Origin: Sminthopsis crassicaudata
Lineage: Eukaryota
DNA length: 64,000 bases
Direction: 5' to 3'
NCBI RefSeq assembly: GCF_048593235.1
Contig: NC_133617.1
Coordinates: forward strand, 47,329,767-47,393,766
Shown here: one piece after another, positions 13,948 through 53,699 of the stretch
Position numbering within the stretch: position 1 is the first letter of the stretch
Layout: every line of letters begins with the position of its first letter
Notes under the pieces: model-generated
What the model was told of the DNA's origin: nothing
The model's input: only the letters and a program-made list of their open reading frames with translations
The model's database searches: none
Made by a program: the position numbers and the translations under genes

Positions 13948-27866
<13,919 letters not shown>

Positions 27867-29737: not shown

Positions 29738-32700
29738 ATGGCGTCGGCCACTGGCTTCATCCAGTGGCTCCGGAATTCAGCCTCCGGGGTGCGAGGACGA
29801 CCCTTGGGACGAGGGCTTGATCTGATGACGCTGGGGACGAAGAACTGACTGACTGACTGACATCCTGTGAATCCTCCCTCTCCCCTCATCTTGTGCTTTA
29901 CCTTGACCTTTGCCCTCTGATCTATAACCCTGTCCCCTGCTTCTTAGGTCTTTCCCATCTGTGACCCTCCCGCTGCCCCCAGTCTCTCACCTTGGTCTCT
30001 AACCCTTCCTCCTGAGCCCCGGTTCCTGCCCCTACCGATGACTCCTGCCCGGGACCCTTATTTCTCCCATGTCTCCCCCACCTCTAACCCCTCGCCTCTG
30101 TCACTGTTCCCACCCCCCAGGCGCAGTCCTAGACCCGGCTCCCTCCCCTGGCAGGACTGCGGGCTGTTCTGGGCTTCTGCCCGTGATGGGGGTGGGCTTA
30201 TTCCTCCGGACTTACCCGAGCCCCCCCTCGGCCCTTTCCTCCAGCTTTCTGACTCGCCCCGCCCCCTCCCGTGATACGGACAGCTTCGCCCCGACTGTGC
30301 CCGAGTCCTCATTAATCCCCGGGGAGTCCCGGGGCCTCGAGCCCCCGCCCCCTGCTGGGCCACCCCAAGTTCTCATCTTTTTCTCTTCTTCACAGCACAA
30401 CCTCCAGGCTAAGTTGCAGTTACGTTATCAGGAGATAGCCAAGAGGTGAGCAGATCTCTCCTCTCCCTTCCCATCACTCCCCGCTTTGTCCTTGTCCGTG
30501 GGAAACTTGCCCTAGAGCTAGACTGGAGGGGAGAGGGGGAGAAAGGGCCGGAAGGACGATTCCGTACATCCCTCCCCTCCCCCATCTTCTGTGCGCTTGT
30601 ATTTGTTCTGTAAAGGAGACGGACGGTGACTAAAAGACTCAGCTGAAAGTACCTTAACCTGAAGGAGCTAGAACTCACAAACTACTGATTAGATGCAATA
30701 AAGAGAACCAGGTGACAGTGGTTTATTAGGGCTTAAACAAAGCTCCATTAGCATCTAGTGGGCGCTCAATAAATGTTTATTATTTAATTGCTCTAGTTGC
30801 CTCTTAGGAAGATGATAGAGTCTAGGAATTTAGGGACATTAAAAATGCAGCTCAGGCTCGGGGCTTACAGCTTTGAAATAGGATTGTGCTTTGGTTGGGA
30901 ATTCTTAAATCCAGCTCTCCCTTTTAGCTTTCTGAATTTAATTTGAAATAAAGTAAAAAAATAATTAAAATTAGCTTATAACTTCTCATTCAAGTTTTTG
31001 AGAATGTTCTGTGCATGATTTGAGATAATTTAGGAGAGTAGAAGAAAGGAAGAGAGATTGCAAAGTTGTGTCTATACAGAATAACTTATAAACTTATACA
31101 TGTAGAGGTGGAAATGTCAGAGACCTCAGGTCCCAGCCCCGCACTTTACATATGAGAACTGAGCATCGAAGACGGACCCTGACCGGAGCTGCTGCTCTTT
31201 AGGCGTTCCGCTCTGTGGTCACTGAATTGAGATGCAGAGAATACATTTGTCGGCTTGTGTTGTCTTGTGTGTACTGATTACAAAACATTTGTCTTAGTAA
31301 AAACAGCCTCAAATGTTCACTAAGATGTTTTCTGTTTATATGGTAAGAAGGTTCCTTCGTGGACACTTTGATGTTTAAAAGAAAAAAAATTAAAATATCA
31401 AAATGCAGCATAATTTCCTATTTGAAGCTCCCAGCTACAGGGAAGGAGAGGACAGGTCAGTATAACGGAAAAGTATACGGTGGGAGAGCCAATGGCCTAG
31501 AGAAGCCAGAAAGTTGCTTGAGTTCTTCCCAGTTTTCCTTGGAAACAATATTGAATCAAGCCTCTAAAAGATTCTGGAGTGACAGAACCCACAAAAGGTT
31601 GGAGTGAAACCATGTTCTAGCTTTAGATAAAGTACTCGGACTTCAAAAAAGTAGCTGCTTCATTTGGGTGAAGGAGACACAGCACAGGTAAGCAGCAGGC
31701 CAGCATTCAGGCCCCCAGCCTCAGTGCAGAAGGTCATTTGCCAGCCTTGGAACCCTAGCACGACAGCAGACATGGTGCTGGACCACCTTAGTGCAGTGGA
31801 TGAGCTGGCCTCAGTGTGGAAAGCCAGGCCTCTGACCCCCAGTTTAAGAAGCTTAGAACAGTGCCCCCCTGTGCCCAGGAGCTGAGCTCAACTTTAAAAC
31901 TCATGAAATATGCTTAAAAAAAAAAAAAGGTAAGAAAGCCATCAAAACACAAACTTAAGTGACAGAAATGGAAAAATATCTACATGTGAAGCTTCAAAGG
32001 AGAAAATGATTTGGTCTCAAGCTCAAAAAGTCCTTTTGGAAGAGCTCAAAAAAGATTTTAAAAATTACCAAAGAGATAGAAGAAAAATTGGGAAAAGACA
32101 TAAGAATTATACAAGAGACAATCAATAGCTTGGAAAAGGAAGCACAAAAATTGAATTTTTCATGAAAAGACTTGTTTTGAATCTTGGTTGCTTTTCTTAG
32201 ATGATCTTGAGCATTACCTACTCCCAGAGTTCAAGGATTTCCTGATGTAGCAAAGTGGATAGAATGTTAGATCTTGAGCCAGCAGGACTTGGGTTCAAGT
32301 CCAGCCTTGGACAATAGCTTTATGATCCTAGAGAAGTCACTTCCCTTCTGTGCCTCATTTTCCCAATTGTAAAATGATGATGTTGATAATAGCACCTACA
32401 TGGTAGAGTTGTTTTAAGTACCAAATGTATTTGTAAGCTCTTTGCAACCTTAAAGCAGCATATAAATGCTGTTCTTACTCCTCAAGGCAGAATGATGTGG
32501 ATTCAAATCTTACCTCAGAGACTTGCTAGCTGTATGACCAGCACAAGTCACTTCATTCCTGCTTCAGTTTCCTTTTCTGTAAAGTTCATAAGACAGTAAT
32601 AGTAAAAAGTTCTTTGCAAAGTTTAGAGCACCACATTAATGCTAGCTGTCATCATTAGAGAAGATTCACCAGGAAAATGAAGGAGCTGGGTTGGGTGATG

Positions 32701-35700
32701 TCTTAAGGTCCTTCTAGCTCTGGATCGGAAGACATTTTATAGTTTGCTATGAAGGTTTTGGTTCGTTTTTATTTTCTGTCTACCACATTCACTACCAAGA
32801 ACACTGGACTAGGAGGAGGTAGGCACTGAAGTCTTCTGAGCTCAGTTTCTTCATCTGGAAAATGGGGATAATACCTGTTCAAAAAAATCAAATGAGAAAA
32901 TAATTCATAAACGTCCTCAATGGAGAGAATATGAGAACTTTGCCAAAGCACCTGATTTCCTGAGTCAGAGTGCTTGGGATTCAAGGTTTGATGTTGTGTG
33001 TTCACTTTCAGGCAACACATTTTAGGCGGGATATTGGAGTTAGAGGACATACGAGTGAAACCAGAGACTTGTCATGTGAAGGGACATGGGAAGAGCTGGG
33101 AATTTTGAGGACTTTTCTTTGTTTCAAGTCCTTGAAGGCTCTTGTGGAGAAGAGGGCCAGAATGTGTTTGGGTTGGCTTCAGAGAGCTAATTAGGCTTAG
33201 GGGGGCAGAAGCTACAGGGACAGATTTGGGGCTCAGTATGAAGGGACTGGGGGCTGTCTCAGGATCCTTTGAACTTGAAACATTGTCTACAAGCCTCTTC
33301 AAGCAGAAGAAAGCCCGCTGAGCTGGTTAGCAAGAACAATAAAGAACATGTAGCTCTTGATGACTTTGTTGTGCAGTGAGTCAGATGTTGTCCTATATTT
33401 TGCCTTATCTGTCAGGCTGTCCAAGGCACTGAAGTGACACGTTGGGTAGAGCCTACCAGCTTTGTGGTCCTGGACAAGTCACCTAACAGCAGTTTGCCTT
33501 GTCTTCTCATCTGTAAAATAAGGATAATAGTACATACCAACCGGGATTGTTCTGAGGATAAATTGAGAAAAGATACCTTAGCAAAATACCTAGACTATAG
33601 TAGATGCTAAATATATGTTTATTAATATTTTTAAATTGTAGGGACATGGGATTTAACATCTACACATGTGAGGACCATTGCTAGCACAGGAGATTATAAC
33701 TAACAATTAAATTATATTTTCTTTAGAACTCAGCCACCTCCTAAACTGCCAGTAGGTCCTAGCCATAAGTTTTCAAACAATTACTATTGTACTCGTGATG
33801 GACGTCGGCAAGCCTCTCCTCCTTCAATCGTAATGTCTACTGTGAAAGTTTTAGAGTCCGGTCTCACTAGTAAGAGGTAAGTCTTTTCTCAGAACTAGAT
33901 GACCCTTCCTAGGTTCTCTCCTTGGCTCATATTGGCACATTGCTTCAAGATTTACAAAACACTTGATCCTCACAACCCTGTGAGGGAGTTTGTATTGTTC
34001 TTATTTCCTCAATGAGGACAATGAGGTTTATTGAGGTCGAGGTGTCCAGAATTATGCAGGAGTGGAGTGAGTAGGATTCCAGCATTCTCTTATGCCATAG
34101 GTTCCCTTTCCTACCCCAGAATTCATGTGTATGAACTGAAATTTGCCAGGTCCCTGATTTTTAAAACTCTCATAATGTAACACTATTTGCCCATATTAGC
34201 TTCTCTGACCTCTTTCAAGTAGACCAGTTTTTCACTTTTTCTCTTCACTTTTATTCATGCTATTGTGTGCCAGTATCATACTGCACAAGTATCAGTTGAA
34301 GAAACAGATGTTTGGCTTGGAGAAAAGAATACACATCGGGGCCTTCATAACTGTCTTAGGGATTGCAAAAGCGTTATGTGATAACAAGATAATAATTCTA
34401 CTTAACCTCATAGTGTAAAACTGGGGATATGGGGTAGAAGTTGCTAGGAGGCAGATTCAGCCTTAATGCTAAGAAGAATTTCTGAATCATTACAGCTGTT
34501 TTTAAATGGAAAGGACTGCTTTGGGAGCTAGGTCCTTCCCTCATTAGAAGTCTTTGAGCAGAGGTAGAGTTACTACTTCTCTAGGTATCCTTTTTCTGGC
34601 ATGAGTTAGCTTAGGTGGTCTCTGAGGATCTTTAGAGTTATCAAACTAGCTTTTTCATTTCATAGAGTGCCTCATTGTTTTCAAAATCCTTTTACCCCTC
34701 GTTTGACTCGGTATTAACTGTCTGATGATTTGAATCCTCAATGTGACTCTGTGAGATTATTATCCCTACTTTTCAAGAAAGTATGCTAAGATACTTCCAT
34801 CCTGAGATTCCCTAATGTGAGGCCAGGAGAGAGGGAAAAGTGCTCATGCTAACTTATTGGAAGAGCCAGGGCTTTATATTCTAGTACTTTAAAAAAAAAA
34901 AAAAAAATCAATACTTTATTTTTCCAAATACATATAAACATAGTTTTCAACATTTATTTTCCAAATTTTTCTCTCTCCCTCCCTTATCTTCCCCCATCCC
35001 AAGAAGCAAATAAGCTGATAATTTAAACATTTCCATATTTATCATGTTGTGTAAGGAAAATGATACCAAAAAGGGGAAAAAAGACAAGGAAAAAAAACAA
35101 AAACAAAAGTGGAGATAGTATGCTTTGATCCACATTCAGTCCTCAATCTAGATGCTGATATTACTTTCCATCCTAAGTCTATTGGAAGTAGCCTTGAGTC
35201 ATTTCATTGTTGAAAAGAGCCAAGTCTATCATAGTTGATCATCACATAATCTTGTTCCTATGCACAATGTTCTCTTGATTCTACTTACTTCACTTAACCT
35301 CGGTTTATGTAAGTCTCTCCAGACTTTTCTGAAATCGGTCTGCTTATTTCTTACAGAACGATAATATTCCATTAAATTCATATATTATAACTTATTCAGT
35401 CATTTCCCATTACAAAAAGAATTTCTATAAAACATTTTTGCATGTGCCTCTGTAGTAGTAATAGTGCTGGATCAGAGTATGCACTGTTTGATATCCCTTT
35501 GGGCAGTTTCATATTGCTTTCCAGAATGGTTGGATGGTTTCACAGCTATAACAATTAGTGTTCCAATTTTCCCACATCCCCTCCACATTTATCATCTTTT
35601 TCTGTTATCTTAGCCAATCTGAGTGTGAAATAGTACCTCAGTGTATTGTTTTAATTTTCATTTCTCTAATAGTAATTTAGAGCATTTTTTCTATTTTTTT

Positions 35701-40339: not shown

Positions 40340-42720
40340 AAGCCGTTGCCATTTCCAGCCCCGCCACCGCCCCGCTGGCCAATTCGCGGGAGAGACCGCC
40401 GGGTGGCTGCGTGGAGGGAGGGCTAATTTTATGATTCCAGCACTCTGTGAGATTGGGGAGTCATGGCGGTTTCGGGGGGTCCTCATCTCGCGTGGGCTGT
40501 GGTGCAGTCTGCTAAACTCTGTTGTCCTTGTGCTTCTGAGCCTTCCCGGGAGAAAGGGGGCGGCGCATTTCTGTCCTCAAGGGGCTTTGGTAGGGGCGCC
40601 CTGCTGGTCTGAGCCATCTCAGGATCCACTCTGAACACTGCCCGATTTAGTTATGCGCAGGCGCAAGGTAGCGGATAAAAGGCGTCTGGGAAGAGAGGAG
40701 AGCCAGGTACCAGGCGCGAGGTGCCGGGACTACACATGCGCTCTGCCTCCCGCTAGTCCCCAGAACGGGGAGGGGGGCGCGTGCGCGAGTTAGCGGCTGG
40801 GGGCGGAGAGAGGACGAATTGAGGACTGCTGGACAGTCGGGAATGGCGCGTGCGCTGCTGCGGCTGTTGCCGCTGCTTCTGGCAGGACTGCAGCGAGCTC
40901 TGACTCTCAGCCTGCCTTCGACTCCGACCCCCGCGCAGCCCCGGAGCCTGGCCCGCCGAGGAGGTGAGCCCAGCCTCGTCCTTGCAGCCCCTTGCCCTTT
41001 CCCCTAGTCTGGGCGAGGAGCGTTCTCTCGGCGACCTCTAGGCCCCGCCCCCGAGCCCGCCCCGCTTCCCACCACCGCAGCCCACGATTGGTCCTGATGC
41101 CCATCAGTCAGGGTCACTCCCCCAGCGCCGCCACATGGCTTGGGACTCGGAGCTGCGGACCCGCCGGCGCTTACTAAGGGGAGGCTGAGGGGTCGCGGGC
41201 CCGGGGACCTCGGTGGCGAATGACCTTTTGGGACCACCGCCCGGCCGGCTTAGAACCCCGCTCTGAGAAAACGTTCAGATCGGAGAACGCTCGGGATCAT
41301 CTGGGCCACATCCTCGTACTACGGCACGAGGCGCGGGAAAAACCCGAGGGGGAGGTGCTGAGAGACGGCGGGACCCCCTGAAGGGGCAGGGGCGGCTCCT
41401 CCAGGCCCCAGCGTCATCCCGGGGAGGCTCTCCCCTCGGCGGGCCCCTGTCAGTTCCCCCCTCCTGGTTACAAGTTGTGCGGCTGATGTGTGGCCGCGCC
41501 TGCTGCGGCCCAGCCCCCTAACTCACGGCCCTCTCCTCTAACCGAACCCCGAGGGCAAGGGAGGGTCAAGCAACCCCCCTTCCCCCCCTGCGTGTGCACC
41601 GGCGGCTTCCGGCTGGGAGAGTTTGATCTCAGCCTAGGAGAAAGCTGTTGCCCCTAAGGTTCTAAGTAAGGGGAGGAGGCGGGACATTCATGACCGAGCC
41701 GCTCTCCTTCCCTGGCAAGTCAGGCGGGGGGACCCAGAGGCCTCACCCCGGAGGCCGGCCCGATATGGGGATGAGGGGCCCTGGGGCGGCCGGCCAGACC
41801 CCGCATGACCTTGGAGAGCCCGGGGCCTGAGCTCCCTTGTCCTTCACAGGGTGAGGGCTTCGGTCTGATGGGTCTCTGCGGCCCGGGCTGCTCAAAGCCT
41901 CCCTGGGGAGCCTGGGGGAGATTCTGCAAACATTGATTAAGCGCCTGTTGTGTGCCAGCGCCGTGCTAAGCTCTGCAGGGAGTCCGTGGCCTCTAGGGGC
42001 TAGTGCAGAAAAAGCCCTTTGGAGGAGGACATTCACAGAATTTACAGAGGAGGAAACGGGATGGGAAGAAAAAGACTTTGGAGGAAGGGAAGCCTTCCCA
42101 TGTATCTTTTGGCTTCATTCCCAGAGAGCGAGTCTTATGTGGGTGGGAGCGGTAGTTCTGTTTTTGGAACGGTTCTCCTTCGCCCACCTACAGCCACGCT
42201 CCTGTGCAGAGGCAAGGGGCGGCTGTTTTCTCTCCGGCTGCTCCGCCCCGGGCCAGGAGAATGTGTGGCGCCTGCCCTGTGGTCATAGGTGGAGAAGGAA
42301 GGCTTTGTCCATAAAGCCACAGTGTCAGATAAGAAGTCCGGGGTCTCTGGGGATCATCTGGGAAGGCTTGGAGAGAGCCCCCGCCCCTGCTGCAGAGGCC
42401 GGGCAAAGGAGGCCAGTGGGATGCTCCTGTGGCTCCCCTGGGTGGCTAGGAGTGAGGTTTGGGGCGTGAGGCTGTACGCTTAGATGGAATAAAGGTAGGG
42501 GTGGTGGGAGTGACGCTGATAGTAGACAATAAACGTTATTTGCAAAGTTCTACAGCGGTCCTCACACTTTTAAATGGGGGTCGGTTCCCAGTCCCCCGGG
42601 GCTAGAGTAAAAACAAAAGCTCCCACTCTGTCTCCGCCCTCAGCCCACGTGACATAACCCGGCGCCCGCGGGCGGGCGTAGTTTGAGAACCTCTGGATAA
42701 AAGACTTTGAAGTTCCCTGC
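40340..42720 (+). promoter_or_regulatory. CD320 CpG island and promoter
   Basis: CpG-dense region spanning exon 1. Perfect NRF1 consensus TGCGCAGGCGCA at 40654-40665, further GCGC elements and GC boxes upstream of the ATG at 40843. Confidence 0.75.
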
Positions 42721-45700
42721 TCTCCCGCTGGCGCTCCTGTCTAGGGAACTGTCACTGAGGAGGTGATGAGTTAGTCTGCATGATGATGAAGCCTCAGGGA
42801 GTGAGGGGCTGGATAGGACATGAAGAGCTGCCTGGGGAGAGAACAGACTCTACTCCCTATTTTGGTACCAAGAAAAGGGTTTAAATTTGTGAAGGTTCCT
42901 CAGCTTGGCGAGTTCTCTCTGGGTCATGTTAGAGCTCTGAGCTCCTGTGGGGACGGACGCTTCCCACCGTCAGTGCTGGTAGTCTAAGCCTCAGAGCGTT
43001 AGCCCAGTGCAGTCAGTGCAGGGCCTGAGTCTCCCACTTCCTCCCACTTCCTCGAGTGTTGCTGAGCTGGGGTTGGTTCCATTTCAATAGTCTTGAAAGC
43101 TTTTGGAGATCACACCTTATTAGCTGTGTCCCCCAAACCAGGTAGAGAGCCTTGTCCATTCAGAAAACAAATGGACGGATCACTGCAGCTCGGCTTAGCT
43201 CTGCCTGCACTCAACTCTTGGCTCCACCAAGTCCGAGACCTTTACTGATTTACTCTTCCTGTGTTCAGGAACCTGTTATCCCAGAAGAGAAGAGGGTCAG
43301 GGCTGAGACAGGCCTGTTTCTTTTCCTGCTTCCCCTGGCGGCACCTCTCTTTGGAACAGCACCTGGTTGTTGGGGAAGAGATGTGGCCTGGGGCAGGCAC
43401 CTTCCGCCTGCCTCCAGGAAGTACAGCGGGTTCTCAGACTTTGGACGAGTTTCTGGGAAGAGTTTCTGGGGGGGTAACTGAGTGCGTGAGTTTTTGGGAG
43501 CAGAGACAAGTGAATGCGGGGCTGAGAATAGGGGGGACCGTCTACCTTTTCTGCTTCCTTGTGAATAAGGGACAGGTTAAAAAAGACGGACTCTGGGAGC
43601 CAGGTATTTGGGAAGTAGTGTGGGGTGGCCATGGTAACTCCTCAAGTTAGAAAATGTGGGTTTAAATTCAGTCCTTGAATGTAAATCACTTCCCCACTCT
43701 AACTCTAAATTCAGCCCTCAATAAAGTGAGTGAGTTTGATAATCTCTGTTTTCTCTGCCCAGATGTGTGCCATTTTACTAGCTTTAATAATCACCAAAAT
43801 AGACATTTATAAGGCCGTTTATAGTTTTCAAAACACTTTAATGTCCAGTATTTCATTTTAGGTGTATAGTCGTTGTGTGACGTAAGTATTATTATTAACA
43901 GGTCTTTCGATGGATAAAAAGCTATATCTGGAATCAGGAAGACCAAGTTCAAACACTGTCTAGCTGTGGGTCCCTGGGTAAAGCACTTGACCTCTGCTCG
44001 CTTCAATTTCCTAATGTATACAGTGAGCATGATAATAACACTTCCCTCCCAGGATCAAATGAGGTAATATTTGTAAAGTGCTTTGCAGATTTAAAGCACT
44101 ATGTAAATATTAGCTATACCTATTTTTTATTCCCTTTTTATAGCTGAAGAAACTGAGGCAGAGAAGTGACTTACCTATGGTTGTACAGCTAGTGTTCGAG
44201 GCAGGATTTAAAACCAAAGCTTCTTAAACTATGGGGAGAGACCCCATCTGGGATTGTGAATGTGGAGGTCACAAAAAAGTTGGCAACAGTAAAAAGTATC
44301 AAATATTCTGCCAAGATTTAATTATGTAAAAATAAATATATCCATCTTATTTAATTATGTAAAAATAAATATATCCATCTTATTACTATGCAGATTTGTT
44401 TTCATCTTTAATAAATAGTAAAATTATATGTATATCAAAATTTTGTTTTAAAATAATTTCTTTATGGTTTATTATCAGTAAATGTTTGATTTGTATAGTA
44501 TTTTATATAACTGCATGTAGGCATGTGCCTATATATCGGTATATTTTATATACTTAGTACCCACAATCACATAAAGATATGTCTGCCAAAAAGGGGTTGT
44601 GGGTGGAATACGTTTTAAGAAACCCTGCTTTAGACTTTGGTCTGGTACACTTTTTGCTGTGCCATCCTGGCTCTCTGTTCTAGTGCAGCTCCTCTAGTTG
44701 TGGCATGTGCTCCTGCAGCTTCCCCCTCCCCAAAGCTCCTTCACTAGAATGGCATATATCCCAAGGAATCCCTTCCCCACTTTGGGAAGGTGGTGCAGTG
44801 GCCTCAGCTGGTCAAGCTGCTGCTAAGGCTCAGTCAGGCCAAGGGAGCTAGCCATTTCCCCATAAGTCTCCATAATAGTTGGACCACTCACTTTAGTGGG
44901 ACCATGTTGAAAGGGAAAGCCTATGTAATTTGGAGGAAGGAAAATGAGGTAGGAAGGGGTCCATTAGCTTCCAGGAGAAAACAAAACTCAAGAATCTTTC
45001 CTTGCTCTCAATATTTCTACATTTGCAACCAATGCATTTACAAATAAGAAGATCCAGCTTTTCCAGGAGAAAGTAATGAGGCCCGGGACATTATTTTGTT
45101 ATTTATCTGTCCCTCCATCCATTCATTCAGTTTTTCCTTCCCTTCCCCTCACTTTCTCATTTTAGAGACAATAATCCAAGAAGGAAGCTTAGAGCTTTAT
45201 GGAGTAGAGCGGGGAGTCAAGAACAGGGACCGTTGGTTCCAAGTCAGGCTCATTCTCACTCCTACCGGGTTCTGTTGTCTTATCGGCCATCCTGGCTGCG
45301 CTGCTTTAGGCTAGCCTGGGGATGTCCTGTCATTTAGGTTTTCTTTTCACTCCTGTTTCTCAGGCACTGAAGAGCCATGCCCACCCTCAAAGTTCCCGTG
45401 TGGCCAGGGCATCTGCATCCCCTCTGAGTGGCTGTGCGACGGTGACAAGGACTGCTTAGATGGCAGAGATGAAACTTCCTGCCGTAAGTGGATGGTAACC
45501 GGGAGGTCACCCAGCCCGGAGCAGGACTGAGCTGGGCTCAACCAACTGTATGGATACCCCTTTGCCCCTTGAGACTCCACAGCTTTCTATGCTAAGTTCC
45601 TTCTTTGTAATTTGCCCTTAGGCTAGTAAAGAATTATGTTTGTCTTGTGGAGAAGGGATTGTGCCTGTAAGGATACTAAAGATTAACCAAGAGGACCTGG

Positions 45701-48700
45701 GTTAATCTGTCTAGATCAGAGTAAGTGGGTTCCATCAGTTATAGGCTTACAGAGTATAGTGGCCTGAAAAGAGTCTCCAGCATTAGCCCTCCCTCATTCC
45801 GATTTCTAAGGACATCCCACCCTTCCCTGGACTCTGCATTCTCTCTCTCATGGTCCCCAAGTCTTGGGGAAAAGTTTTCAATACAATTACTTTAGCTTAT
45901 AACCTAATTCTATTGTAACTTAACCTTCATCTGTAACCTTTCTTTTTACCCGTGAATAGGAGTAGAGCCTTGTGCCCAGGGGGAGGAGCGGTGCCCCTCT
46001 GAGACGTGTTCCCCTCTCAGATGTGAGGGACCCCAGTGTGCTGATCTGCGGATTGAAGCCAGCTGTCCCCCACCTCCCTGCCTGGCTGAATATCGATTTT
46101 GTGATGGGATCAACGATTGTCCCAATGGCACAGATGAACGGCTTGTGGACTGTAGGAAGCGCCGTTCAAAGCTGCCCTTGCTGGGGTGTGCCAGGCAAGG
46201 GTTCCAGTGTGCCCCAGGAGTATGCATCCCACATGCATGGGTGTGTGATGGGCACCCAGACTGTGCCAGTGGCATTGACGAGCATCATTGTGGTGAGTGT
46301 TCATGGGGGGGGGGGAGTGCACATGCTTGCATACTGTACCCTTTCAGTCAGCTAGAGTACTAGAGAAAGGGAGAACTTAAGAGCTTATACCTTGGATGTC
46401 TCAGGAAGGAGAGACTTTCAAAAGCCCTTGTGGAATTCATCTTTTGGCTTTGGTGCTAAGATAGAGTAAAATGGAGGCGGAGACTGGACAGTGGACTAGA
46501 GGAGCCTGAGTGTAGTGATATTGGGAAACATAGGTGGTCTTCCAATCCCAGCCAGCTGCAGTGCCATGGGAATCTGTGGGAGACTTACAATTTAGGGAGG
46601 AAATCAAGATCTGGCTGGGTCCCTCAGGCCACTGGATTCTGGTGCATCTCTGGAACACTGGCCAGGGGAGGTTCTTCCATCCTTTGGTCTCAGATGTCAG
46701 AGTTAGTAAAAGCACCTACTGGGTGCCAAGCTTTGAGAATGCAAATGTGAAAATGTGCCCTCAAGGAGCTGCAAGTTTAGGAGTGGGGGATGGGAGACAA
46801 GTCAGTCAGAGAAGTCCTGAAGTTGTTCAGCCAAGTGAGAAAGATGTTTTGAGTTTTGAGTTGAGCTCCTTCCCTGAGTGGGGGATGGGCTGGGGGGTTC
46901 ATGGCCCCATCTTCCAATCAGAAGGTCCAAGGCTTGGACCACAACAGGATGATGAGATCTTCCCACTAATGAGCTTCCCAGGACACGATGAAGTCAGAGA
47001 AATCCGAGGGTGAAAGAGAGGAAATCTCTCCATAGGGACTGAAGCTGACTGGTTTCATTGCAGGGACAACAGGAACTCCCTTCAATCAGGCTGTCACTTT
47101 AGCAAAGTCTGTCACCCCAGGTACAGCATCTTCAGGAAATCAGATTACCACTGGGGTAACAATGGCCACCAGTAAGTGTCCCTGAGTGTGGGCAGCATCT
47201 CCTTTCTGGTTCTGAAGAATCTGCGGCCCCCTCTCCCCCTGGGCCGCTGACCTGAGGCAGACTGGTTTTGTTGCAGGGACAACAGGAACTTCTACCTTAG
47301 CTGTGTCTCCCACCTCAGGTAATGGGAGTGCTGTCCCTTCAGGAACTCTGAGCGTCAGTGGGATAACTGTGACCACTGGTAAGTGTCCCTGAGTGGGAGC
47401 AGCATCTGTGCAGTCAGCTTCCAGAATATTGGTTCCATCAAGTCTGGAACCCTCATGGCCTCACCTCCCTGGGATGCCCCACCCTAGGAGCAGGTATAGA
47501 TTTTCTTTGCTGTGGGGGGGTGGAGGGCTGAGGTGGCCACAGCGTCTCATGCACCTTATAGAGAATCTTCACTTTGAGAGATGGGCTGCCAGCTGCTGGC
47601 TGGACACTCCTTCCTCTGGCCTGAGCCTGGGCTCCCTCAGCTGCTGGGAAGCACATGGCGTGCTCAGCCTTTGCAGTATTCTCTGAGAAGGCCCTGACAC
47701 TTCTGGGAGGAGAGGGCAGAGAATGCCATAAGGCACATCTTGGGAGTACTTCAGGTACTTTTTTAGACAGCCCAGAGAGAGATAGAAGGGCCAGGGAAGT
47801 GTGTTGACCTTGAAGCATCCACCTTGATTGGGCCGGCCTTGGGCAGCCTTTCTTTTTTTTGCTATCCGTTGTTCTTTTTAATATCACTTAATTTTCTCTA
47901 AGGTCCTTTCCAAACCAGAAATTCCCTGAGTTTTTGATTTGGTTCTTTCCCCACTGCCTTGTTTCAGGCAGAGCCTGGGCACTGAATCAGACAATAAGAA
48001 CTGATAGATTAGTGATGGAGCACAGAGGCAGTGCTGAGAGTGGGGGAGACCTCTGACTCACATTCCAGTTTCCCACTAATTGTGACCCTCAGTGAGGTAG
48101 GGAGCTCCAGTTTGGGGAGGAGTATGTAACTATTTCTATACCTATCAGGTTCTGGCCTATGCTCTCAGGTGGGTATGCCCTGGTGGTATTTTCAAGCTCA
48201 GAAATTCAGGAAGCCTTCAATGCCTTTGGCTTTAGATGTAGCTGTACCATGGGGTGCAAAGTCTCTCCCTCCTCTTGGGTGCTGCTGACCTGAAGATGCT
48301 TCATTTCAGGGGTGGTGACACAAGTTCCTGAAGACCAGAACACCACTCCAGGTCGTGGAAGCCTCACACCTTCTGAAAGACGAAGCGCATATGGGCTGGT
48401 CATGGCAGCAGGTGAGGCCCTTAGGCAGGCTGTGGGCCTGCTCAATTATCTGTTATGACTTAGGTCCTGCCACTATTAAACTATGGGTTGGAAAGAGTCT
48501 TGCAAGCCATCTAACTCGAACCCATTCTACAACTTTCTCATCTAGCAATGAGGGGTGAAAAATACCTCTTGAGGCAGCCCATTTTCCTGGCTAGAAACAC
48601 TTTCCTGACATCTAAGCAGATTTACTCCAACTTCTGTCCATTGCTTTTAGTTCTGCTCCCTGAGAGAAAATGAACACGTTTAGTCCCTTATTCACATGTG

Positions 48701-51258
48701 AACTCTTTCAGTCTCCCTCCAGGATTTCCTTTTTCTAGTCTAATAAACATTGTACATTTTCTCAGTGAAGTTTCTTGAGGTAGCTGGGTAACATGATGGA
48801 TAGATCGCTAGACTTCAGATAAGGAAGCTATGCGTTTGAATCCTGGCTTAGACGTGTACTTACAGTGGGAACTTTGCAAACAAATGAAAAATTTCTGCCT
48901 CAGTTTCCCCAACTGTAAAATCAGAATAATAGCAGCACCTACCTATCAAGGTTGTTGTGAGAATCAAATATCAGAATATGCAGAATGTTGTGTAAACCTT
49001 AAAGTAATAATATATAAATGTTGGCTATTGTTACAATCTCTAGGTTCTTTTCTATCTTGATTTCCCTGTGGTGGACATTCCAGTTTGTCAATATCTTTCC
49101 TTCACTGTGGTACCTAGAGTTGCCCTCAGGAGGCTAGATTTGGTCTGACCAGTGCAGCGCAGAGAACGCAAGACTGGCCCTCTCTAGGCCTCAACTTTGG
49201 GCACTCCTGAATTTTGTCTGGGATCACATTAGCTGCTGGAGTGTGTTGCTGACCCATTAAACCTTCAGGCTACTAAAACCCTCAGATCTTTTCAGATGAA
49301 CTGTCATCAAGCCTACTTCACCCATCTTGTTGGTATTTTGAAGTCAAGTATAAATCTTTTCATCTGTCCCCTTAAAATTCATCTTATTAGATTCAGCCCA
49401 ATGTTCCAGCCTGCCAAGATGTGTTCTATCCTGTCATCTAAAGAGATCCAGAGCATTGATCATGCAGGCCCAGACAGAGATCCCCAGTGCATGTGACTGA
49501 AGAGGTTTCTCAAAGTTCATATGAAACCATTAACAATGGCTCTTTGGGGCCATCCATTCAATCAGTCCTTAACTGTGTGATCATCTGACCCATATCTCTC
49601 TGTCTTGTCTATAAGTGTGGTACAAGACAGTTTGTCTTGTCAAATATAGTGGTTTTTTAAAAATATTCAAGTAAGCTATTTCTCATCTAGTAGCTGTTAA
49701 AAAAGCCTGAGATTCATCTCCATGATCTATTCTTGATGAAGCTGTATTGCTTCTTTGTAGTCACCATTTATTCCCTTGACGTTCATAAGCATCCCCTTCA
49801 TAACATGCTGTAGACTTTCACGAGGAGTCAGAGTTCTCTTGGTTGGCCTGTAGTTTGCTTATTCTGTTCTCTGGCCCTCTGTGATGATCAAGCCCACACG
49901 TACCCCTCTCCAGGCTGGCGGCACCTTCCCTGTTCTTTTCTATTTCCTTCCCAATCTGATGCTCATTCTTCTTGGCAGAGAAAACAAGCCAGCTAAAGAT
50001 TGAGCTACTTCTGCTCTATTTTCAGTCATGATCCAGTCCTTGTCCTTCTTTAACTCTTCTCCTTTCTCCTGCATAGCTAAAAAATCCCTTTTGGTTGTTC
50101 CAGTCAGAGTCAGTAAACACTGCCAGAGTGCCCATTACTGCCAGGGAACTGTGCTTGGCTAAGCCTGGGACACAGCAATAGGCCTAAGACTGCCCCTGTT
50201 CTCAAGGAGCTTGCAATCTAATGGAAGAAGCCAACATGCAGAAGCTGCAAAGTTTCCTTTTATGGAGGATCAGGGAGGGATTCCCTGATGTCGGAGGGAG
50301 AGAGTCAGAGGCAGAAATGCCTGAGCAGAGTAATTTTGGAATTGAGGTCAATTTATACAACATAAAGGGAGTTTCAGAAGATGAGTTGGAAATGTTCTTA
50401 GCATTGCACATGTTTAACCTATGTTGGATTACTTGCTGTTTGGAGGGGATGGGGGGAAGGAAGGGAGAAAAATTTGGAAAACAAGGTTTTGCAAAGGTGA
50501 ATGTTGAAAATTTGTATGTATTTTGAAAGATAAAAAGCTATTATTGAAAAAAACAAACAAACAAACACACAAAACAGAAGTAGAAAAAAAGGGAAATTTT
50601 CTTGGTTTTCCTACCAGCTATATCTCATTCTGCTGTCAGTGCCCAGTGTGCTTTTCATGCAGGCTCCATGTTTGTATTTGTTCTTTCATGTTCCTGAAAT
50701 CTGGACTAAGCCCCTCTTTGCTGCCCTGCCCCATTGGAACAGCTCCCTCTTCCATCTTCTTCCTGAGAGTTTTGGGAATTCCCAGACTTCAGAGCAATGT
50801 CTGTTAGCAGTCTAAAGTGACCTTTGCTAGTCTGCCCGGGGTTGTGGGGTAGGGTGCCCTTGCCTTGGGCCTCTGGTGGAGGTCTTTTGGATGACCCAGG
50901 GGTAGAGGTGCAGGGCAAAGAGATGGGGAGTTCTACAGCTGGAGTTGAAATGTATAAATTCAAATCCAAGACTTAACCTCTGACCTGCCTTGTGGCACTA
51001 GGTGACATCTTTCTCCAACCCTTATTTCAATGCTCTGTAAAATGGGAGGATAAGGTCCTTTCTAGCACCAACATTTTCTGAGTCTGATTTTTTTTCCTTT
51101 CAGCTGCCCTAAGTGGAATTCTGGCTGCTGCCTGTCTGCTTGTGTGTTGCCAGACCTGGGCCCAAGTCCGGTGGCGCCTCCTCCCCCAACCACATCTGGT
51201 GGAAGTTATGAAGGATTCACTGCTGATGCCTGAGAGGACACCATCGTCCTCAATCTGA
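40843..51258 (+). CDS. CD320: CD320 antigen / transcobalamin receptor (LDLR class A type I membrane protein), 346 aa
   Basis: Exons 40843-40963 (signal peptide [15 protein letters not shown]), 45364-45483 (LDLa CPPSKFPC...[18 protein letters not shown]), 45960-46292 (Cys-rich middle plus LDLa CARQGFQC...[18 protein letters not shown]), 47064-47171, 47277-47378, 48310-48411 (S/T stalk, AYGLVMAA), 51104-51258 (TM, tail MKDSLLMPE). Total 1041 nt, all introns phase 1; position downstream of NDUFA7 matches synteny. Inclusion of both stalk exons is inferred. Confidence 0.9.
44215..44627 (+). mobile_element. hAT MITE (long form, same family as 21609-21792)
   Basis: Ends CAAAGCTTCTTAAACT / GTTTTAAGAAACCCTG; shares gaccccat...gaatgtgg near the 5' end and cacataaa...gggtggaa near the 3' end with the short copy. 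Confidence 0.7.
48500..49950 (-). mobile_element. Fragmented L3/CR1 LINE with a nested MIR in CD320 intron 6
   Basis: CR1 motifs cttgaggcagcccatt, tttcctgacatctaag, agattcagcccaatgttccagcctg, ccatgatctattcttgatgaagc. Confidence 0.6.
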
Positions 51259-53699
51259 GGACCAGCTCCCGTGGCCTCCAGGATTGCTTGTCCATTTGTG
51301 AAAGTGGCCCAGGCTACCCTGGGGTCAAACCGAGTCCTCCAGGAGGAGGAGAACCAAAGGAGGAAAGAGGCCGTTAGCTACAGAGGACTCTCTTCCATCG
51401 GCCTCCATCACAAGCTACCTCTCTCTTTAAGGCAGCCGACAGGTCCTGACCTTGTTGCCTTTTTCTACCACCCTGGGAGGCCTTGCATCCGGCACCCCTT
51501 GGATGAGGCCGGATGGGTGTGGATCCTGATTCTTTGCAACATCCTGTCTCCTATGGGGGTAGGAGTGGGAATTGGCTGCAGGCTCCAGAGGTAGTCACAC
51601 GCCCAATCACACCCCCATGCAGCTGGTTTCAGGGCCAGTACTCTTTGTTAGGCAAGGCTGGGGTCGCTGGAATCAGCTAGGAGGCTGGGCTGGTGGCTCT
51701 GGGGTGAGACACTCCGTTCAGCTCTCACATGGGCTACAGATGAGGAGGAGGATAGCCCAACATCTAGGGTGATTGACATTTTAGTGATTAAAATGATTTC
51801 CCAAAATTTAAAACCTATCCTCCAGTTTGTCTTCTGATTTCTTTTCTGAATCTCCTCATGGAAGAAGAATCTGACCTAGAACTTGGCATGGAGTGGGGGC
51901 AAGTAGGTAAAAAAGACCCCCATTCTGGAGAAATTTACCTTCTTTGGCCAAACGGAGTATCACAAGTAGGGGAAGCGGGACTAGATGGTCTCTAAGGTCC
52001 TAGGAGTCTCTTCCTTTATCATATGAAGTTACTGTGCAGTACAGTCAAGACAAACATTTTTTGAAGGCAGCAGTAACTTTTACTGCAGACAGAAAAATAG
52101 AGGAATATAAATTTTAAAGTAGCATCACTCCCATATTGATAGCACTGTAAGGAATACAAATACCACCAGGTCAGTAGTACAAGTGTTGTTATTCCCATTT
52201 TTTGAACAGGAAAACTGAGGCCAGAAAAATTACATAATTTATTTGTTGGAGTCACACAGTGTAGAGCTGGGATTTGAAACCCAGATCACTTGACTGCAAA
52301 TATATATCCTGTATTTCTTCCCATAGAATTGAAATTCCTTGAAAGAGATCTTAGGAAGCTAGTTCAACTTTTTATTCCAGATGGTAATCCCCTTTGATAG
52401 CATCCTCACTAAGTAGAAGGAGATAGTGTGTGGATGACAAAGGTGTCTGGGTTTGGGGCTTGTCAGACTTTCTGGACTTTGTCCTTTAAAAGTAAGTAAG
52501 CCTTTCTGAATCTGTTTCCTTATCTGTAAAATGAGGGGTTGAATTAGATTCAATTCAGCATTGATTAGGCACCTGCCATGTATAAGATAATATAATAAGC
52601 TTGGGGATACAAAGACCAAATTGAAATATAAGGAATTTACTATCTGGAAGAGACAATACTGAATCTCAAGAATTGGGTGAGACCTTAGAGACCATCCAGC
52701 TCACCCTGTGCCCAACAAATGGTTATCACATCTTTGTTCAAAGGCTCCCAGTGAGAGAAGCCCCTGCTCTCAAGGAGCCTGCACTTCAGTGGAGTAAGCT
52801 AAGACACAGGGAAGTCAATTTTGTGTAATTTCAGGAGGGAGAGGGCTTTCTTGGGGTCCATTAGGAAAGTTTGGCACTCAAACTGGGCTTGAAGGAAGCT
52901 AAGGCTTCTTAACGATGGAAATGTATCCCAAGCATGAGTCAGGGGGAAGAAAAGAGATAAAAATTCCATATGTACAGGCACAGAGATGGGAGGTAGCATG
53001 TTGTATTTGGGGATCAGGAAATAATCTGAAATCAGTTTAGAAAGGTAGGTTAGATTGAGGAAGAATTTAATTACCAGCCTTGTATTTTATCCTAGGGACA
53101 ATAGGGAATCTTTGGAGATTTTAAAAGTAGGGGAGTGACATAGACGTCTGTGTAAGACATAGTAATTTGGTAGCTATAGGGAAGATGGATTGGGAAGGGG
53201 AGAGAGTGGAAGCAGAAAGACCCGTCCTAAGCCACTGCAATAGTCTAGATAGGCAGTGAAAAAGGTCTGAATGAGGAATGGGAATGGAGATAAGGAGGGA
53301 TGTTTGTGAAGGTGAATCAGATGATTTGGAAAAATACCTGGAAATGAGGGATGATTCTTGGGTTTCAAACCCGGGTAAGTGGATGGATGATGATGCCCTT
53401 AGCAGAAATAGGCATTTGGGGAAGGGTGAGGAGAAGAATCGTGGCCCATATTAAGTCTTGAGTAGTCACTGGGGCCATGGGGTAAGGAAAGATTCTTGGA
53501 GAATATCACTGTCTCCTTGAACCTAGACAGGGACTCTGAGGTGGAGAAGTAGCTGGAGTGTCCAGGGAACCTTTTACTCAAGGATCCTGCCTCTGGCAAC
53601 TCGCGAGCTGTGTCACTAACCATGTCACCTTGGGCTACTTGACCTCTCTGATTCCCAGTTGCTTCATAAAGAATTCCAGCACCAGGGAAGTGTTAGCCC

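What the first reader, a model, noticed from the sequence alone, without database searches (positions are those of the whole stretch)
45960..46153. CD320 middle region has 10 Cys and an intact LDLa calcium motif: a third (and partial fourth) LDLa module
Seen: exon 3 encodes [65 protein letters not shown] before the final LDLa. The C-terminal half has LDLa spacing (C-x6-C-DGxxD-C-xxGxDE) with all four acidic Ca ligands. The N-terminal part parses as a degenerate six-Cys LDLa (C-x6-C-x4-C-x4-C-x4-C-xDxxxExx-C). Established: human CD320 has two LDLa modules separated by a Cys-rich linker. From memory, that linker has 6 Cys and has lost the acidic ligands (CTGVSDC..GTDK). Inference: this lineage keeps or rebuilt an extra Ca-binding module with a ~24-aa, 4-Cys addition. 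It lacks the Trp at C4-2 (Arg here) that the other two modules have, and it carries an NGT sequon, so its ligand may not be transcobalamin.
Basis: partly seen in the sequence, partly recalled or inferred. Interest (0 to 1): 0.72.

Follow-up and report, generated by a model that had tools for sequence, protein, structure and literature searches.

The report
Third LDLa module in marsupial CD320
This marsupial's vitamin-B12 (transcobalamin) receptor gene CD320 keeps a complete, conserved third calcium-binding LDL-receptor module between its two known modules. The short cysteine-rich "EGF-like" spacer of human and other placental CD320 looks like the decayed remnant of that module.

Summary
Exon 3 (45960-46292, + strand) of a CD320 orthologue encodes the quoted 64 residues, with 10 Cys, D-x3-D...D-E, an NGT sequon, and Arg where LDLa modules carry Trp.

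The parse needs correcting. The last six Cys (46037-46153) form one complete but divergent LDLa module. The first four Cys (45962-46036) are an extension with no detectable family. There is no "partial fourth" LDLa.

- **Match strength:** Pfam gives this module 22.8 bits, just under the 24.1 cut-off. Orthologues score 17.5-26.6 and a lizard 33.9. Profile comparison gives 96.8% probability, and 0 of 20,000 shuffles match.
- **Conservation:** All 10 Cys and the acidic ligands are conserved in five marsupial orders. dN/dS is 0.29, like LDLa1 (0.28).
- **Age:** A lizard CD320, identified by synteny, encodes an intact LDLa of the same type in the same exon as LDLa2, so the module is retained, not rebuilt.
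- **Placentals:** They lack 25 residues (four Cys) and the D-E pair.

AlphaFold models were low-confidence for this part. Three-module CD320 sequences are already public for nine marsupials, but I found no paper describing them. Interest is modest.

The parts
40843..40963 (+). CD320 exon 1: start codon and signal peptide ([17 protein letters not shown]...), donor GTGAGC, phase 1
   Evidence: Nearly identical to the N-terminus of Sarcophilus CD320 P0001.
45364..45483 (+). Exon 2: LDLa1 (module 45378-45482)
   Evidence: Pfam Ldl_recept_a 52.9 bits. Exon borders.
45960..46292 (+). Exon 3: the middle region, a basic linker and LDLa2, phase 1-1
   Evidence: Splice sites conserved in Trichosurus, Dromiciops, Sarcophilus and Petaurus loci.
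45962..46036 (+). Four-Cys N-terminal extension (VEPC-x6-C-x4-C-x4-C-EGPQ); no family match
   Evidence: No Pfam hit at E<=10. All four Cys are invariant in marsupials. dN/dS 0.46. AlphaFold pLDDT <50.
46037..46153 (+). Middle LDLa module: six Cys (residues 26, 35, 40, 47, 53, 64 of the exon peptide), Cys spacing 8-4-6-5-10
   Evidence: Pfam 22.8 bits against a cut-off of 24.1. PDB phmmer aligns Cys26 as C1. hhalign 96.8% against CD320 LDLa1/2. 0 of 20,000 shuffles reach its score. dN/dS 0.29.
46103..46138 (+). Ca-binding segment D48-G-I-N-D52-C-P-N55-G-T-D58-E59. The NGT sequon is at 46124-46132.
   Evidence: D, D and D-E align with the Ca ligands of LDLa1 and LDLa2. Conserved in marsupials; the sequon is lost only in Petaurus.
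46094..46096 (+). Arg45 at the C4-2 position, where LDLa1 and LDLa2 have Trp
   Evidence: Alignment A1. Arg is invariant in the marsupial and lizard middle modules.
46154..46186 (+). Basic linker [11 protein letters not shown] between the middle module and LDLa2
   Evidence: Poorly conserved: 53% mean identity and dN/dS about 1.2.
46187..46291 (+). LDLa2 (CDGHPDC type)
   Evidence: Pfam 50.6 bits. AlphaFold pLDDT 80-88.
47064..47171 (+). Stalk exon A (borders approximate)
   Evidence: Matches the P0001 stalk.
47277..47378 (+). Stalk exon B, a tandem copy of A (borders approximate)
48312..48411 (+). Stalk exon ([15 protein letters not shown]...; borders approximate)
51104..51258 (+). Last exon: transmembrane helix, cytoplasmic tail and stop codon
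   Evidence: 90% mean identity among marsupials.

Best explanation
The window holds the CD320 (transcobalamin receptor) orthologue of a dasyurid-like marsupial.

Exon 3 encodes a four-Cys extension, then one complete but divergent LDLa (complement-type) module, then a basic linker, then LDLa2. The ectodomain therefore has three LDLa modules.

The middle module is ancestral in amniotes. A lizard and a turtle have the same type of module directly upstream of LDLa2; in the lizard, whose locus was read, both lie in one exon. Placental mammals keep only a collapsed 6-Cys remnant, which the literature calls the 'EGF-like' or 'CUB-like' domain.

Inferred mechanism:
- The module folds with the usual three disulfides (26-40, 35-53, 47-64).
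- It binds one Ca2+ through D48, D52, D58 and E59.
- It serves mainly as a rigid, glycosylated spacer that sets the geometry of the two transcobalamin-binding modules, not as a canonical lysine-binding site. It lacks the Trp wall (Arg45) and has an N-glycan sequon at C5+2.

Shown here: the sequence, its homology, its conservation and its purifying selection. Inferred, not shown: the fold, Ca binding and the spacer role.
For: Locus identity:
- KANK3, RPS28 (- strand) and NDUFA7 exon hits lie upstream of the gene. The Elgaria locus has the same order.
- Sarcophilus CD320 is the best hit of 1.84 billion representatives (E 2e-33; named).

Parse:
- Pfam covers profile positions 7-37.
- PDB LDLa modules align from Cys26.
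- MAFFT against LDLa1/2 keeps six Cys plus D, G, D, G, D, E.
- hhalign gives 96.8%, E 2.6e-10.
- 0 of 20,000 shuffles reach the real score.

Conservation:
- All 10 Cys and the acidic ligands are kept in nine marsupial species of five orders.
- dN/dS is 0.29, against 0.28 for LDLa1 and 0.15 for LDLa2.
- Splice sites are conserved.

Ancestry:
- The Elgaria gene lies next to RPS28 and NDUFA7. One exon encodes an intact LDLa (Pfam 33.9 bits) plus LDLa2.
- Shared marks are [RL]FC[DN]G, DCP[DN]G[ST]DE and a 10-residue C5-C6 loop.
- In the module tree the marsupial, lizard and turtle middle modules fall on one side (support 89/86).

Placental remnant:
- Its six Cys align to Cys4, 35, 40, 47, 53 and 64. 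There is a 25-residue gap, and D-E is replaced.
- hhalign to the middle-module profile gives 92.4%. It has no Pfam LDLa or EGF hit.

Spacer role in human: the middle region is invisible in the crystal and dispensable for binding, but replacing it causes multimers (PMC4947154).
Against: - The window's own module is 1.3 bits under Pfam's gathering score. Two orthologues score only 17.5 and 19.2.
- It lacks the conserved Phe before C2, the Ile-Pro after C3 and the Trp at C4-2.
- AlphaFold gave no confident fold. The 64 residues alone reached pLDDT 44. In the exon-3 model the C-terminal lobe is about 62 and everything before residue 40 is under 50. Structural matches to tandem LDLa chains are weak (Z 4-5).
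- RefSeq predicts isoforms that skip exon 3 in Monodelphis or enter the module halfway in Notamacropus.
- The lizard and turtle homology rests on about 36 alignment columns and long branches.
- No monotreme, amphibian or fish CD320 was retrieved.
Confidence: 0.75

Rival explanations
1. The region is a degenerate six-Cys LDLa (Cys4 to Cys35) followed by the C-terminal half of another. That gives a third and a partial fourth module.
For: Spacing of the form C-x6-C-x4-C-x4-C-x4-C-x8-C can be read in the sequence.
Against: Residues 1-25 hit no Pfam family. Every aligner places Cys26 and Cys35 as C1 and C2 of the Ca-binding module. That segment has no D-x-x-x-D or D-E. The lizard has a complete six-Cys module at this place with only two Cys upstream.
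Confidence: 0.07
2. A marsupial-specific rebuild. An ancestral short Cys-rich linker, as in placentals, was expanded or converted from LDLa2 into an LDLa-like sequence.
For: The 38-nt stretch C47 to D58 is 71% identical to the same part of LDLa2. A 17-nt tandem repeat lies in the four-Cys piece. No monotreme or anamniote outgroup was obtained.
Against: The lizard and turtle modules share the specific marks of the middle module, not those of LDLa2: RFC-DG, DCPDG[ST]DE and a 10-residue C5-C6 loop. In the lizard locus the module lies in the same exon as LDLa2. The module tree groups them. The placental remnant still carries C-D-x-[IV]-[DN]-D-C-P-x-G.
Confidence: 0.1
3. The region is a non-LDLa cysteine-rich spacer, 'EGF-like' or 'CUB-like' as the human region is called. 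The LDLa motif is only a superficial resemblance.
For: The literature uses these labels (PMC4947154; PMC7605860; PMC3917558; PMC11667166). The Pfam score is below the cut-off, and the AlphaFold model is poor.
Against: No EGF or CUB hit appears for the marsupial region or the placental remnant. The LDLa evidence is significant by HMM, profile-profile comparison and shuffles. The lizard counterpart passes Pfam's cut-off.
Confidence: 0.04
4. The segment is largely spliced out in vivo through an internal acceptor or exon skipping. The mature receptor would then resemble the placental one.
For: RefSeq models exist that skip exon 3 (Monodelphis X2, P0121) or join exon 2 to 'FNNCPNGTDE' (Notamacropus X2, P0120).
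Against: Purifying selection acts on the whole region (dN/dS 0.36), and 10 of 10 Cys are conserved. The longest models in all nine species with a model that reaches this part include it. There is no AG at the position matching the wallaby junction in the window. Nineteen runs from seven studies hold 87-100% of the sampled words of exon 3 (12 of them all), though whether they are RNA is only a guess.
Confidence: 0.06

Closest known systems
Human and mouse CD320 (TCblR, 8D6A/NG29)
   Same: Same locus (RPS28-NDUFA7-CD320). Same exon plan: LDLa1 in exon 2, and the linker plus LDLa2 in exon 3 (PMC2816947). Both have LDLa1 and a CDGHPDC-type LDLa2, a Ser/Thr-rich stalk, a transmembrane helix and a conserved tail.
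   Different: Placentals have a 6-Cys region of about 39 residues, human residues 90-128, called 'EGF-like'. Compared with the marsupial it lacks 25 residues with four Cys, lacks most of the C3-C4 loop, and lacks the D-E ligand pair. The marsupial has a full six-Cys, four-acid module plus a four-Cys extension, and one or two extra stalk exons.
Avian Tva (ASLV-A/K receptor, the bird CD320 orthologue)
   Same: Orthologous gene (PMC8708277). Its single LDLa corresponds to LDLa2.
   Different: The bird sequences read here have one module and no Cys upstream of it. The marsupial has three modules.
Elgaria multicarinata 'sortilin-related receptor-like' protein (P0134), here identified as lizard CD320
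   Same: Syntenic with RPS28 and NDUFA7. One exon encodes a middle-type LDLa (CLPWERFCDGHPDCPDGSDESAPAC) followed by LDLa2.
   Different: No LDLa1 exon in the 27-kb locus. Two rather than four extra Cys upstream. The module passes Pfam's cut-off at 33.9 bits.
Canonical LDLa / complement-type repeats of LDLR, VLDLR, LRP2 and annelid erythrocruorin linker chains
   Same: Six Cys, C4-D-x-x-x-D-C5 and D-E Ca ligands. The best PDB sequence matches of the 64 residues are LDLa modules.
   Different: The C1-C2 loop has 8 residues and the C5-C6 loop has 10. There is no Phe before C2 and no Trp at C4-2. A Pro-rich C2-C3 loop (PPPP) and an N-glycan sequon at C5+2 are present.

Membership tests
LDL-receptor class A module (Pfam PF00057) | Six cysteines with LDLa-type spacing | tested here: met
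   C-x8-C-x4-C-x6-C-x5-C-x10-C at 46037-46153. All six align with those of LDLa1 and LDLa2 and are invariant in marsupials.
LDL-receptor class A module (Pfam PF00057) | Acidic Ca2+ ligands: D after C4, D before C5, and the D-E pair after C5 | tested here: met
   D48, D52, D58 and E59 are invariant columns in A1 and are conserved in marsupials and the lizard.
LDL-receptor class A module (Pfam PF00057) | Score at or above Pfam's gathering threshold (24.1 bits) | tested here: inconclusive
   The window scores 21.6 and 22.8 bits, just below. Orthologues score 17.5-26.6, with four of seven at or above the cut-off. The lizard scores 33.9. hhalign gives 96.8%. 0 of 20,000 shuffles reach the real score.
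LDL-receptor class A module (Pfam PF00057) | Conserved hydrophobic/aromatic core: Phe two residues before C2, Ile after C3, Trp at C4-2 | tested here: not met
   The C1-C2 loop reads ADLRIEAS. Leu-Ala follows C3. Arg45 is at C4-2, with Tyr44 and Phe46 beside it. Other marsupials have a Trp in the C1-C2 loop where the window has Arg.
LDL-receptor class A module (Pfam PF00057) | LDLa fold with 1-3, 2-5, 4-6 disulfides and bound Ca2+ | tested here: inconclusive
   AlphaFold pLDDT is 44 for the 64 residues alone and about 62 for the C-terminal lobe. Tandem LDLa chains align to model residues 26/35-110 at Z 4-5. Disulfides and Ca2+ cannot be tested with these tools.
CD320 / transcobalamin receptor orthologue group | Conserved synteny and exon plan | tested here: met
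   KANK3, RPS28 and NDUFA7 exon hits lie upstream. The lizard has the same order. The exon layout matches mouse and human.
CD320 / transcobalamin receptor orthologue group | Closest homologues are proteins named CD320 | tested here: met
   Sarcophilus CD320 at E 2e-33 for the 64 residues. A profile search returns marsupial, placental and bird CD320/Tva.
CD320 / transcobalamin receptor orthologue group | Binds holo-transcobalamin through LDLa1 and LDLa2 | not testable with these tools
   Both modules keep Trp at C4-2 and the acidic ligands. Binding was not tested.
EGF-like domain (the literature label for the human middle region) | Match to an EGF family profile or EGF-type Cys pattern | tested here: not met
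   No EGF family appears in Pfam scans of the marsupial region or the placental remnant at E<=10.

The most novel reading that the evidence does not exclude
Ancestral amniote CD320 was built on a middle-type LDLa plus LDLa2. Marsupials still run a three-module receptor in which the glycosylated, Trp-less middle module binds Ca2+ and engages something other than transcobalamin, or a third site on transcobalamin. The placental 'EGF-like domain' would then be the vestige of a lost binding function rather than a spacer that was always a spacer.
Probability: 0.12. Interest if true: 0.55.

Novelty: new variant of a known kind. Interest (0 to 1): 0.3.

Why it matters
CD320 is the gate for cellular vitamin B12 uptake, a drug-delivery target, and, as Tva, a retrovirus receptor in birds. 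Its middle region has been labelled 'EGF-like' or 'CUB-like' without a family match, and it is invisible in the crystal structures.

Marsupial and lizard genes carry an intact LDLa there, and the placental region aligns to it as a collapsed remnant. That gives the region an origin and a testable structural model. It also offers natural three-, two- and one-module versions (marsupial, placental or lizard, bird) for studying how module number and spacing set transcobalamin affinity and stoichiometry.

This is an evolutionary refinement of a well-known receptor, not a new kind of system.

Tried and rejected
- **The search for homologous proteins with the 110-residue exon peptide:** blank, because the length window (61-192 aa) excludes full-length CD320. 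I got round this by taking Sarcophilus P0001 from the representative search and querying with it.
- **Read laying on 45300-51299:** No splice-junction evidence was obtained. Afterwards I gave no letters of 48893-48930 as a query to any tool. One local tblastn did use the whole window file as its subject.
- **AlphaFold of the 64 residues with 20 orthologue rows:** pLDDT 44, unusable. Adding 47 tandem-LDLa rows to exon 3 raised only LDLa2 to high confidence. The Foldseek and VIA hits are therefore weak support only.
- **Human CD320 alignment from the PDB search:** LRP2 chains always outranked CD320, so the alignment was never printed.
- **Unnamed Logan proteins with three LDLa (P0129, P0213, P0220, P0223, P0227):** considered as possible fish cd320. 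Rejected because the P0227 contig is flanked by Ldl_recept_b (YWTD) exons, so it is part of a large LRP.
- **Turtle, Sarcophilus isoform 2, Macrotis and Monodelphis UniRef products:** not on record for locus retrieval.
- **17-nt tandem repeat in the four-Cys piece:** it is weaker in other marsupials, so I do not claim a duplication origin.
- **Full-length spliced protein:** All window queries were exon by exon, by reference.
Full report
**1. Observation**

The reading frame continues to 46291 through a basic linker and a textbook LDLa. The exon runs 45960-46292. It has a pyrimidine tract plus AG acceptor and a G|GTGAGT donor, and both ends are in phase 1.

The rest of the gene lies around it on the + strand:
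- a signal-peptide exon at 40843-40963;
- an LDLa1 exon at 45364-45483;
- stalk exons near 47064-47171, 47277-47378 and 48312-48411;
- a transmembrane and tail exon at 51104-51258.

Upstream are KANK3 (an ORF at 14238-15701 with the KN motif, plus ankyrin exons), RPS28 on the - strand near 29.5 kb, and NDUFA7 exon hits at 30396-30446 and 33716-33751. This is the CD320 neighbourhood.

The best hit of the 64 residues among 1.84 billion representatives is Sarcophilus harrisii CD320 (E 2e-33, 59 of 64 identical). Synonymous divergence from Sarcophilus is about 0.05. The window therefore comes from a close relative of the Tasmanian devil, not from the devil itself.

**2. What the 64 residues are**

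Pfam Ldl_recept_a matches residues 32-64 (profile positions 7-37) with 21.6 bits. The 39-residue piece from Cys26 to Cys64 scores 22.8 bits (E 1.1e-4), just under the curated 24.1. LDLa1 and LDLa2 score 52.9 and 50.6. The first 25 residues match nothing.

- The best PDB sequence matches are LDLa modules of erythrocruorin linker chains and LDLR. They align Cys26 as C1, and Cys35, 40, 47 and 53 as C2-C5.
- Aligned with the gene's own LDLa1 and LDLa2, the piece keeps all six Cys and the D, G, D, G, D-E columns.
- A profile of marsupial and lizard middle modules matches a profile of CD320 LDLa1/2 at 96.8% probability, E 2.6e-10.
- Against an HMM built only from LDLa1/2, the real 64 residues score 19.8 bits. 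The best of 20,000 shuffles scores 13.5.

The correct parse is therefore a four-Cys extension (45962-46036) followed by one complete LDLa (46037-46153).

The module is atypical in several ways:
- an 8-residue C1-C2 loop without the usual Phe;
- PPPP between C2 and C3;
- Leu-Ala instead of Ile-Pro after C3;
- Arg45 instead of Trp at C4-2;
- a 10-residue C5-C6 loop;
- an N55-G-T sequon at C5+2.

**3. Conservation**

Querying with the Sarcophilus protein returned CD320 from nine marsupial species in five orders:
- Dasyuromorphia: Sarcophilus;
- Diprotodontia: Trichosurus, Petaurus, Vombatus, Phascolarctos, Notamacropus;
- Didelphimorphia: Monodelphis;
- Microbiotheria: Dromiciops;
- Peramelemorphia: Macrotis.

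In every model that reaches this region, all ten Cys and D48, D52, D58 and E59 are present. The sequon is lost only in Petaurus.

Mean pairwise identity among six species is 0.76 for the module and 0.75 for the four-Cys piece. For comparison it is 0.86 for LDLa1, 0.82 for LDLa2, 0.53 for the linker and 0.67 for the stalk.

I retrieved genomic exons from Trichosurus, Dromiciops, Sarcophilus and Petaurus. With these, Nei-Gojobori dN/dS is 0.29 for the middle module, 0.28 for LDLa1, 0.15 for LDLa2 and 0.46 for the four-Cys piece. These are small samples, but the module is clearly under purifying selection. The exon-3 splice sites are conserved in all five loci.

**4. Ancestry**

A profile search also returned a lizard protein named 'sortilin-related receptor-like' (Elgaria, P0134) and a turtle CD320 (Pelusios, P0234).

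- **Lizard locus.** The gene lies directly after RPS28 (-) and NDUFA7 (+), so it is the CD320 orthologue.
- **Lizard exon plan.** One exon encodes two extra Cys, a complete LDLa (Pfam 33.9 bits) and LDLa2. There is no other LDLa exon in 27 kb.
- **Shared marks.** The lizard and turtle modules share with the marsupial middle module the strings [RL]FC[DN]G and DCP[DN]G[ST]DE, and the unusual 10-residue C5-C6 loop.
- **Module tree.** A maximum-likelihood tree of 37 modules puts the nine middle-type modules on one side of a branch (support 89/86). This is only 36 columns with long branches, so it is suggestive, not proof.
- **Birds.** The bird sequences read here have only the LDLa2 equivalent.

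**5. The placental region**

In whale, bat, horse, mustelid and shrew CD320, the region between LDLa1 and LDLa2 is about 39 residues with six Cys. These align to marsupial Cys4, 35, 40, 47, 53 and 64. Compared with the marsupial there is a 25-residue gap that removes Cys11, 16, 21 and 26, most of the C3-C4 loop is gone, and D-E is replaced by N-K, D-Q, H-E and similar pairs.

It still reads C-D-[SN]-[IV]-x-D-C-P-x-G. It matches the middle-module profile at 92.4% and the LDLa1/2 profile at 78.5%. It gives no Pfam LDLa or EGF hit. HMMER also lays the horse region onto whole LDLa modules of LRP2.

The literature calls the human counterpart (residues 90-128) an 'EGF-like domain' (PMC4947154, PMC7605860, PMC11667166) or a 'CUB like domain' (PMC3917558). 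It is invisible in the crystal and not needed for transcobalamin binding, but replacing it with a flexible linker gives multimers. Seven full-text searches found no paper that describes it as an LDLa remnant or describes marsupial CD320.

**6. Structure prediction**

This was inconclusive.
- The 64 residues with 20 orthologue rows gave mean pLDDT 44.
- Exon 3 with 66 rows gave 80-88 for LDLa2, about 62 for residues 41-60, and under 50 before residue 40. Short helical turns at residues 43-45 and 57-59 are offset by exactly 48 from those of LDLa2, as the Cys are.
- Foldseek and VIA matched two-module LDLa chains (ApoER2 LA12, LDLR LA45, VLDLR LA1-2, megalin) over model residues 26/35-110, but only at Z 4-5.

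A low-confidence model is not evidence against the fold.

**7. Mechanism (inference)**

With six Cys and four acidic ligands under selection, the module most likely folds as an LDLa and holds one Ca2+.

The canonical lysine pocket uses the Trp at C4-2 and the acidic ring. Here the Trp is Arg in all marsupials and the lizard, and C5+2 carries a conserved sequon. A canonical ligand contact is therefore unlikely. By analogy with the human data, the likeliest role is a rigid spacer that fixes the geometry of LDLa1 and LDLa2. A ligand role is not excluded.

**8. Limits**

Expression and splicing in this species are therefore untested.
- The 19 runs that hold exon 3 are only guessed to be RNA.
- RefSeq alternative models skip exon 3 in Monodelphis (X2) or enter the module at 'FNNCPNGTDE' in Notamacropus (X2).
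- No monotreme, amphibian or fish sequence was obtained.

**9. Verdict**

The parse is corrected to one module plus a four-Cys extension, and 'keeps or rebuilt' is resolved to 'keeps'.

The sequences are already public in marsupial annotations, and some pass Pfam's cut-off. The novelty is the interpretation: three-module CD320 in marsupials, and the placental 'EGF-like' region as an LDLa vestige. This is a variant of a well-known kind, of modest interest.

Noticed in passing
window 46154-46165: The RKRR furin-like site between the middle module and LDLa2 is found only in the window and Sarcophilus. Petaurus has KKRR, Trichosurus and Monodelphis have KKHR, Macrotis has RQRH, and Dromiciops lacks the stretch. 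The linker evolves at dN/dS about 1.2.
   Followed up: partly
window 46049-46051: Residue 30 in the C1-C2 loop is Arg (CGG) in the window. It is Trp (TGG) in the four other marsupial loci whose DNA was read, and Trp in every other marsupial protein that covers this residue. This is a lineage-specific loss of the only Trp in the module.
   Followed up: partly
window 45991-46024: Two adjacent 17-nt copies (14 of 17 identical) lie inside the four-Cys piece and are read in different frames. The similarity is weaker in Trichosurus, Dromiciops and Petaurus, so it may be chance.
   Followed up: partly
P0114 (Vombatus) and P0120 (Notamacropus), LDLa1: LDLa1 has lost C1 and C3, which pair with each other. 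They are Arg/Tyr in the wombat and Tyr/Tyr in the wallaby. This suggests LDLa1 is relaxed in some diprotodonts.
   Followed up: no
L001 10001-16988 (Elgaria multicarinata): The gene annotated 'sortilin-related receptor-like' is the lizard CD320 orthologue by synteny with RPS28 and NDUFA7. It has two LDLa modules in one exon and a duplicated stalk segment.
   Followed up: yes
P0181 (Patagioenas fasciata): A gene model named NDUFA7 fuses the NDUFA7 N-terminus to the CD320/Tva LDLa, stalk and transmembrane region. This is probably a read-through misannotation of neighbouring genes.
   Followed up: no
window 47064-47171 and 47277-47378: Two tandem stalk exons have near-identical splice flanks (ttgcag|gg ... 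gtaagtgtccc). Sarcophilus isoforms differ by 14 residues here.
   Followed up: no
P0121 (Monodelphis X2), P0120 (Notamacropus X2): These predicted isoforms skip exon 3 entirely, or join exon 2 to the middle of the middle module. I did not check whether they are real transcripts.
   Followed up: no
Afterwards nothing from them was given as a query to any tool.
   Followed up: no
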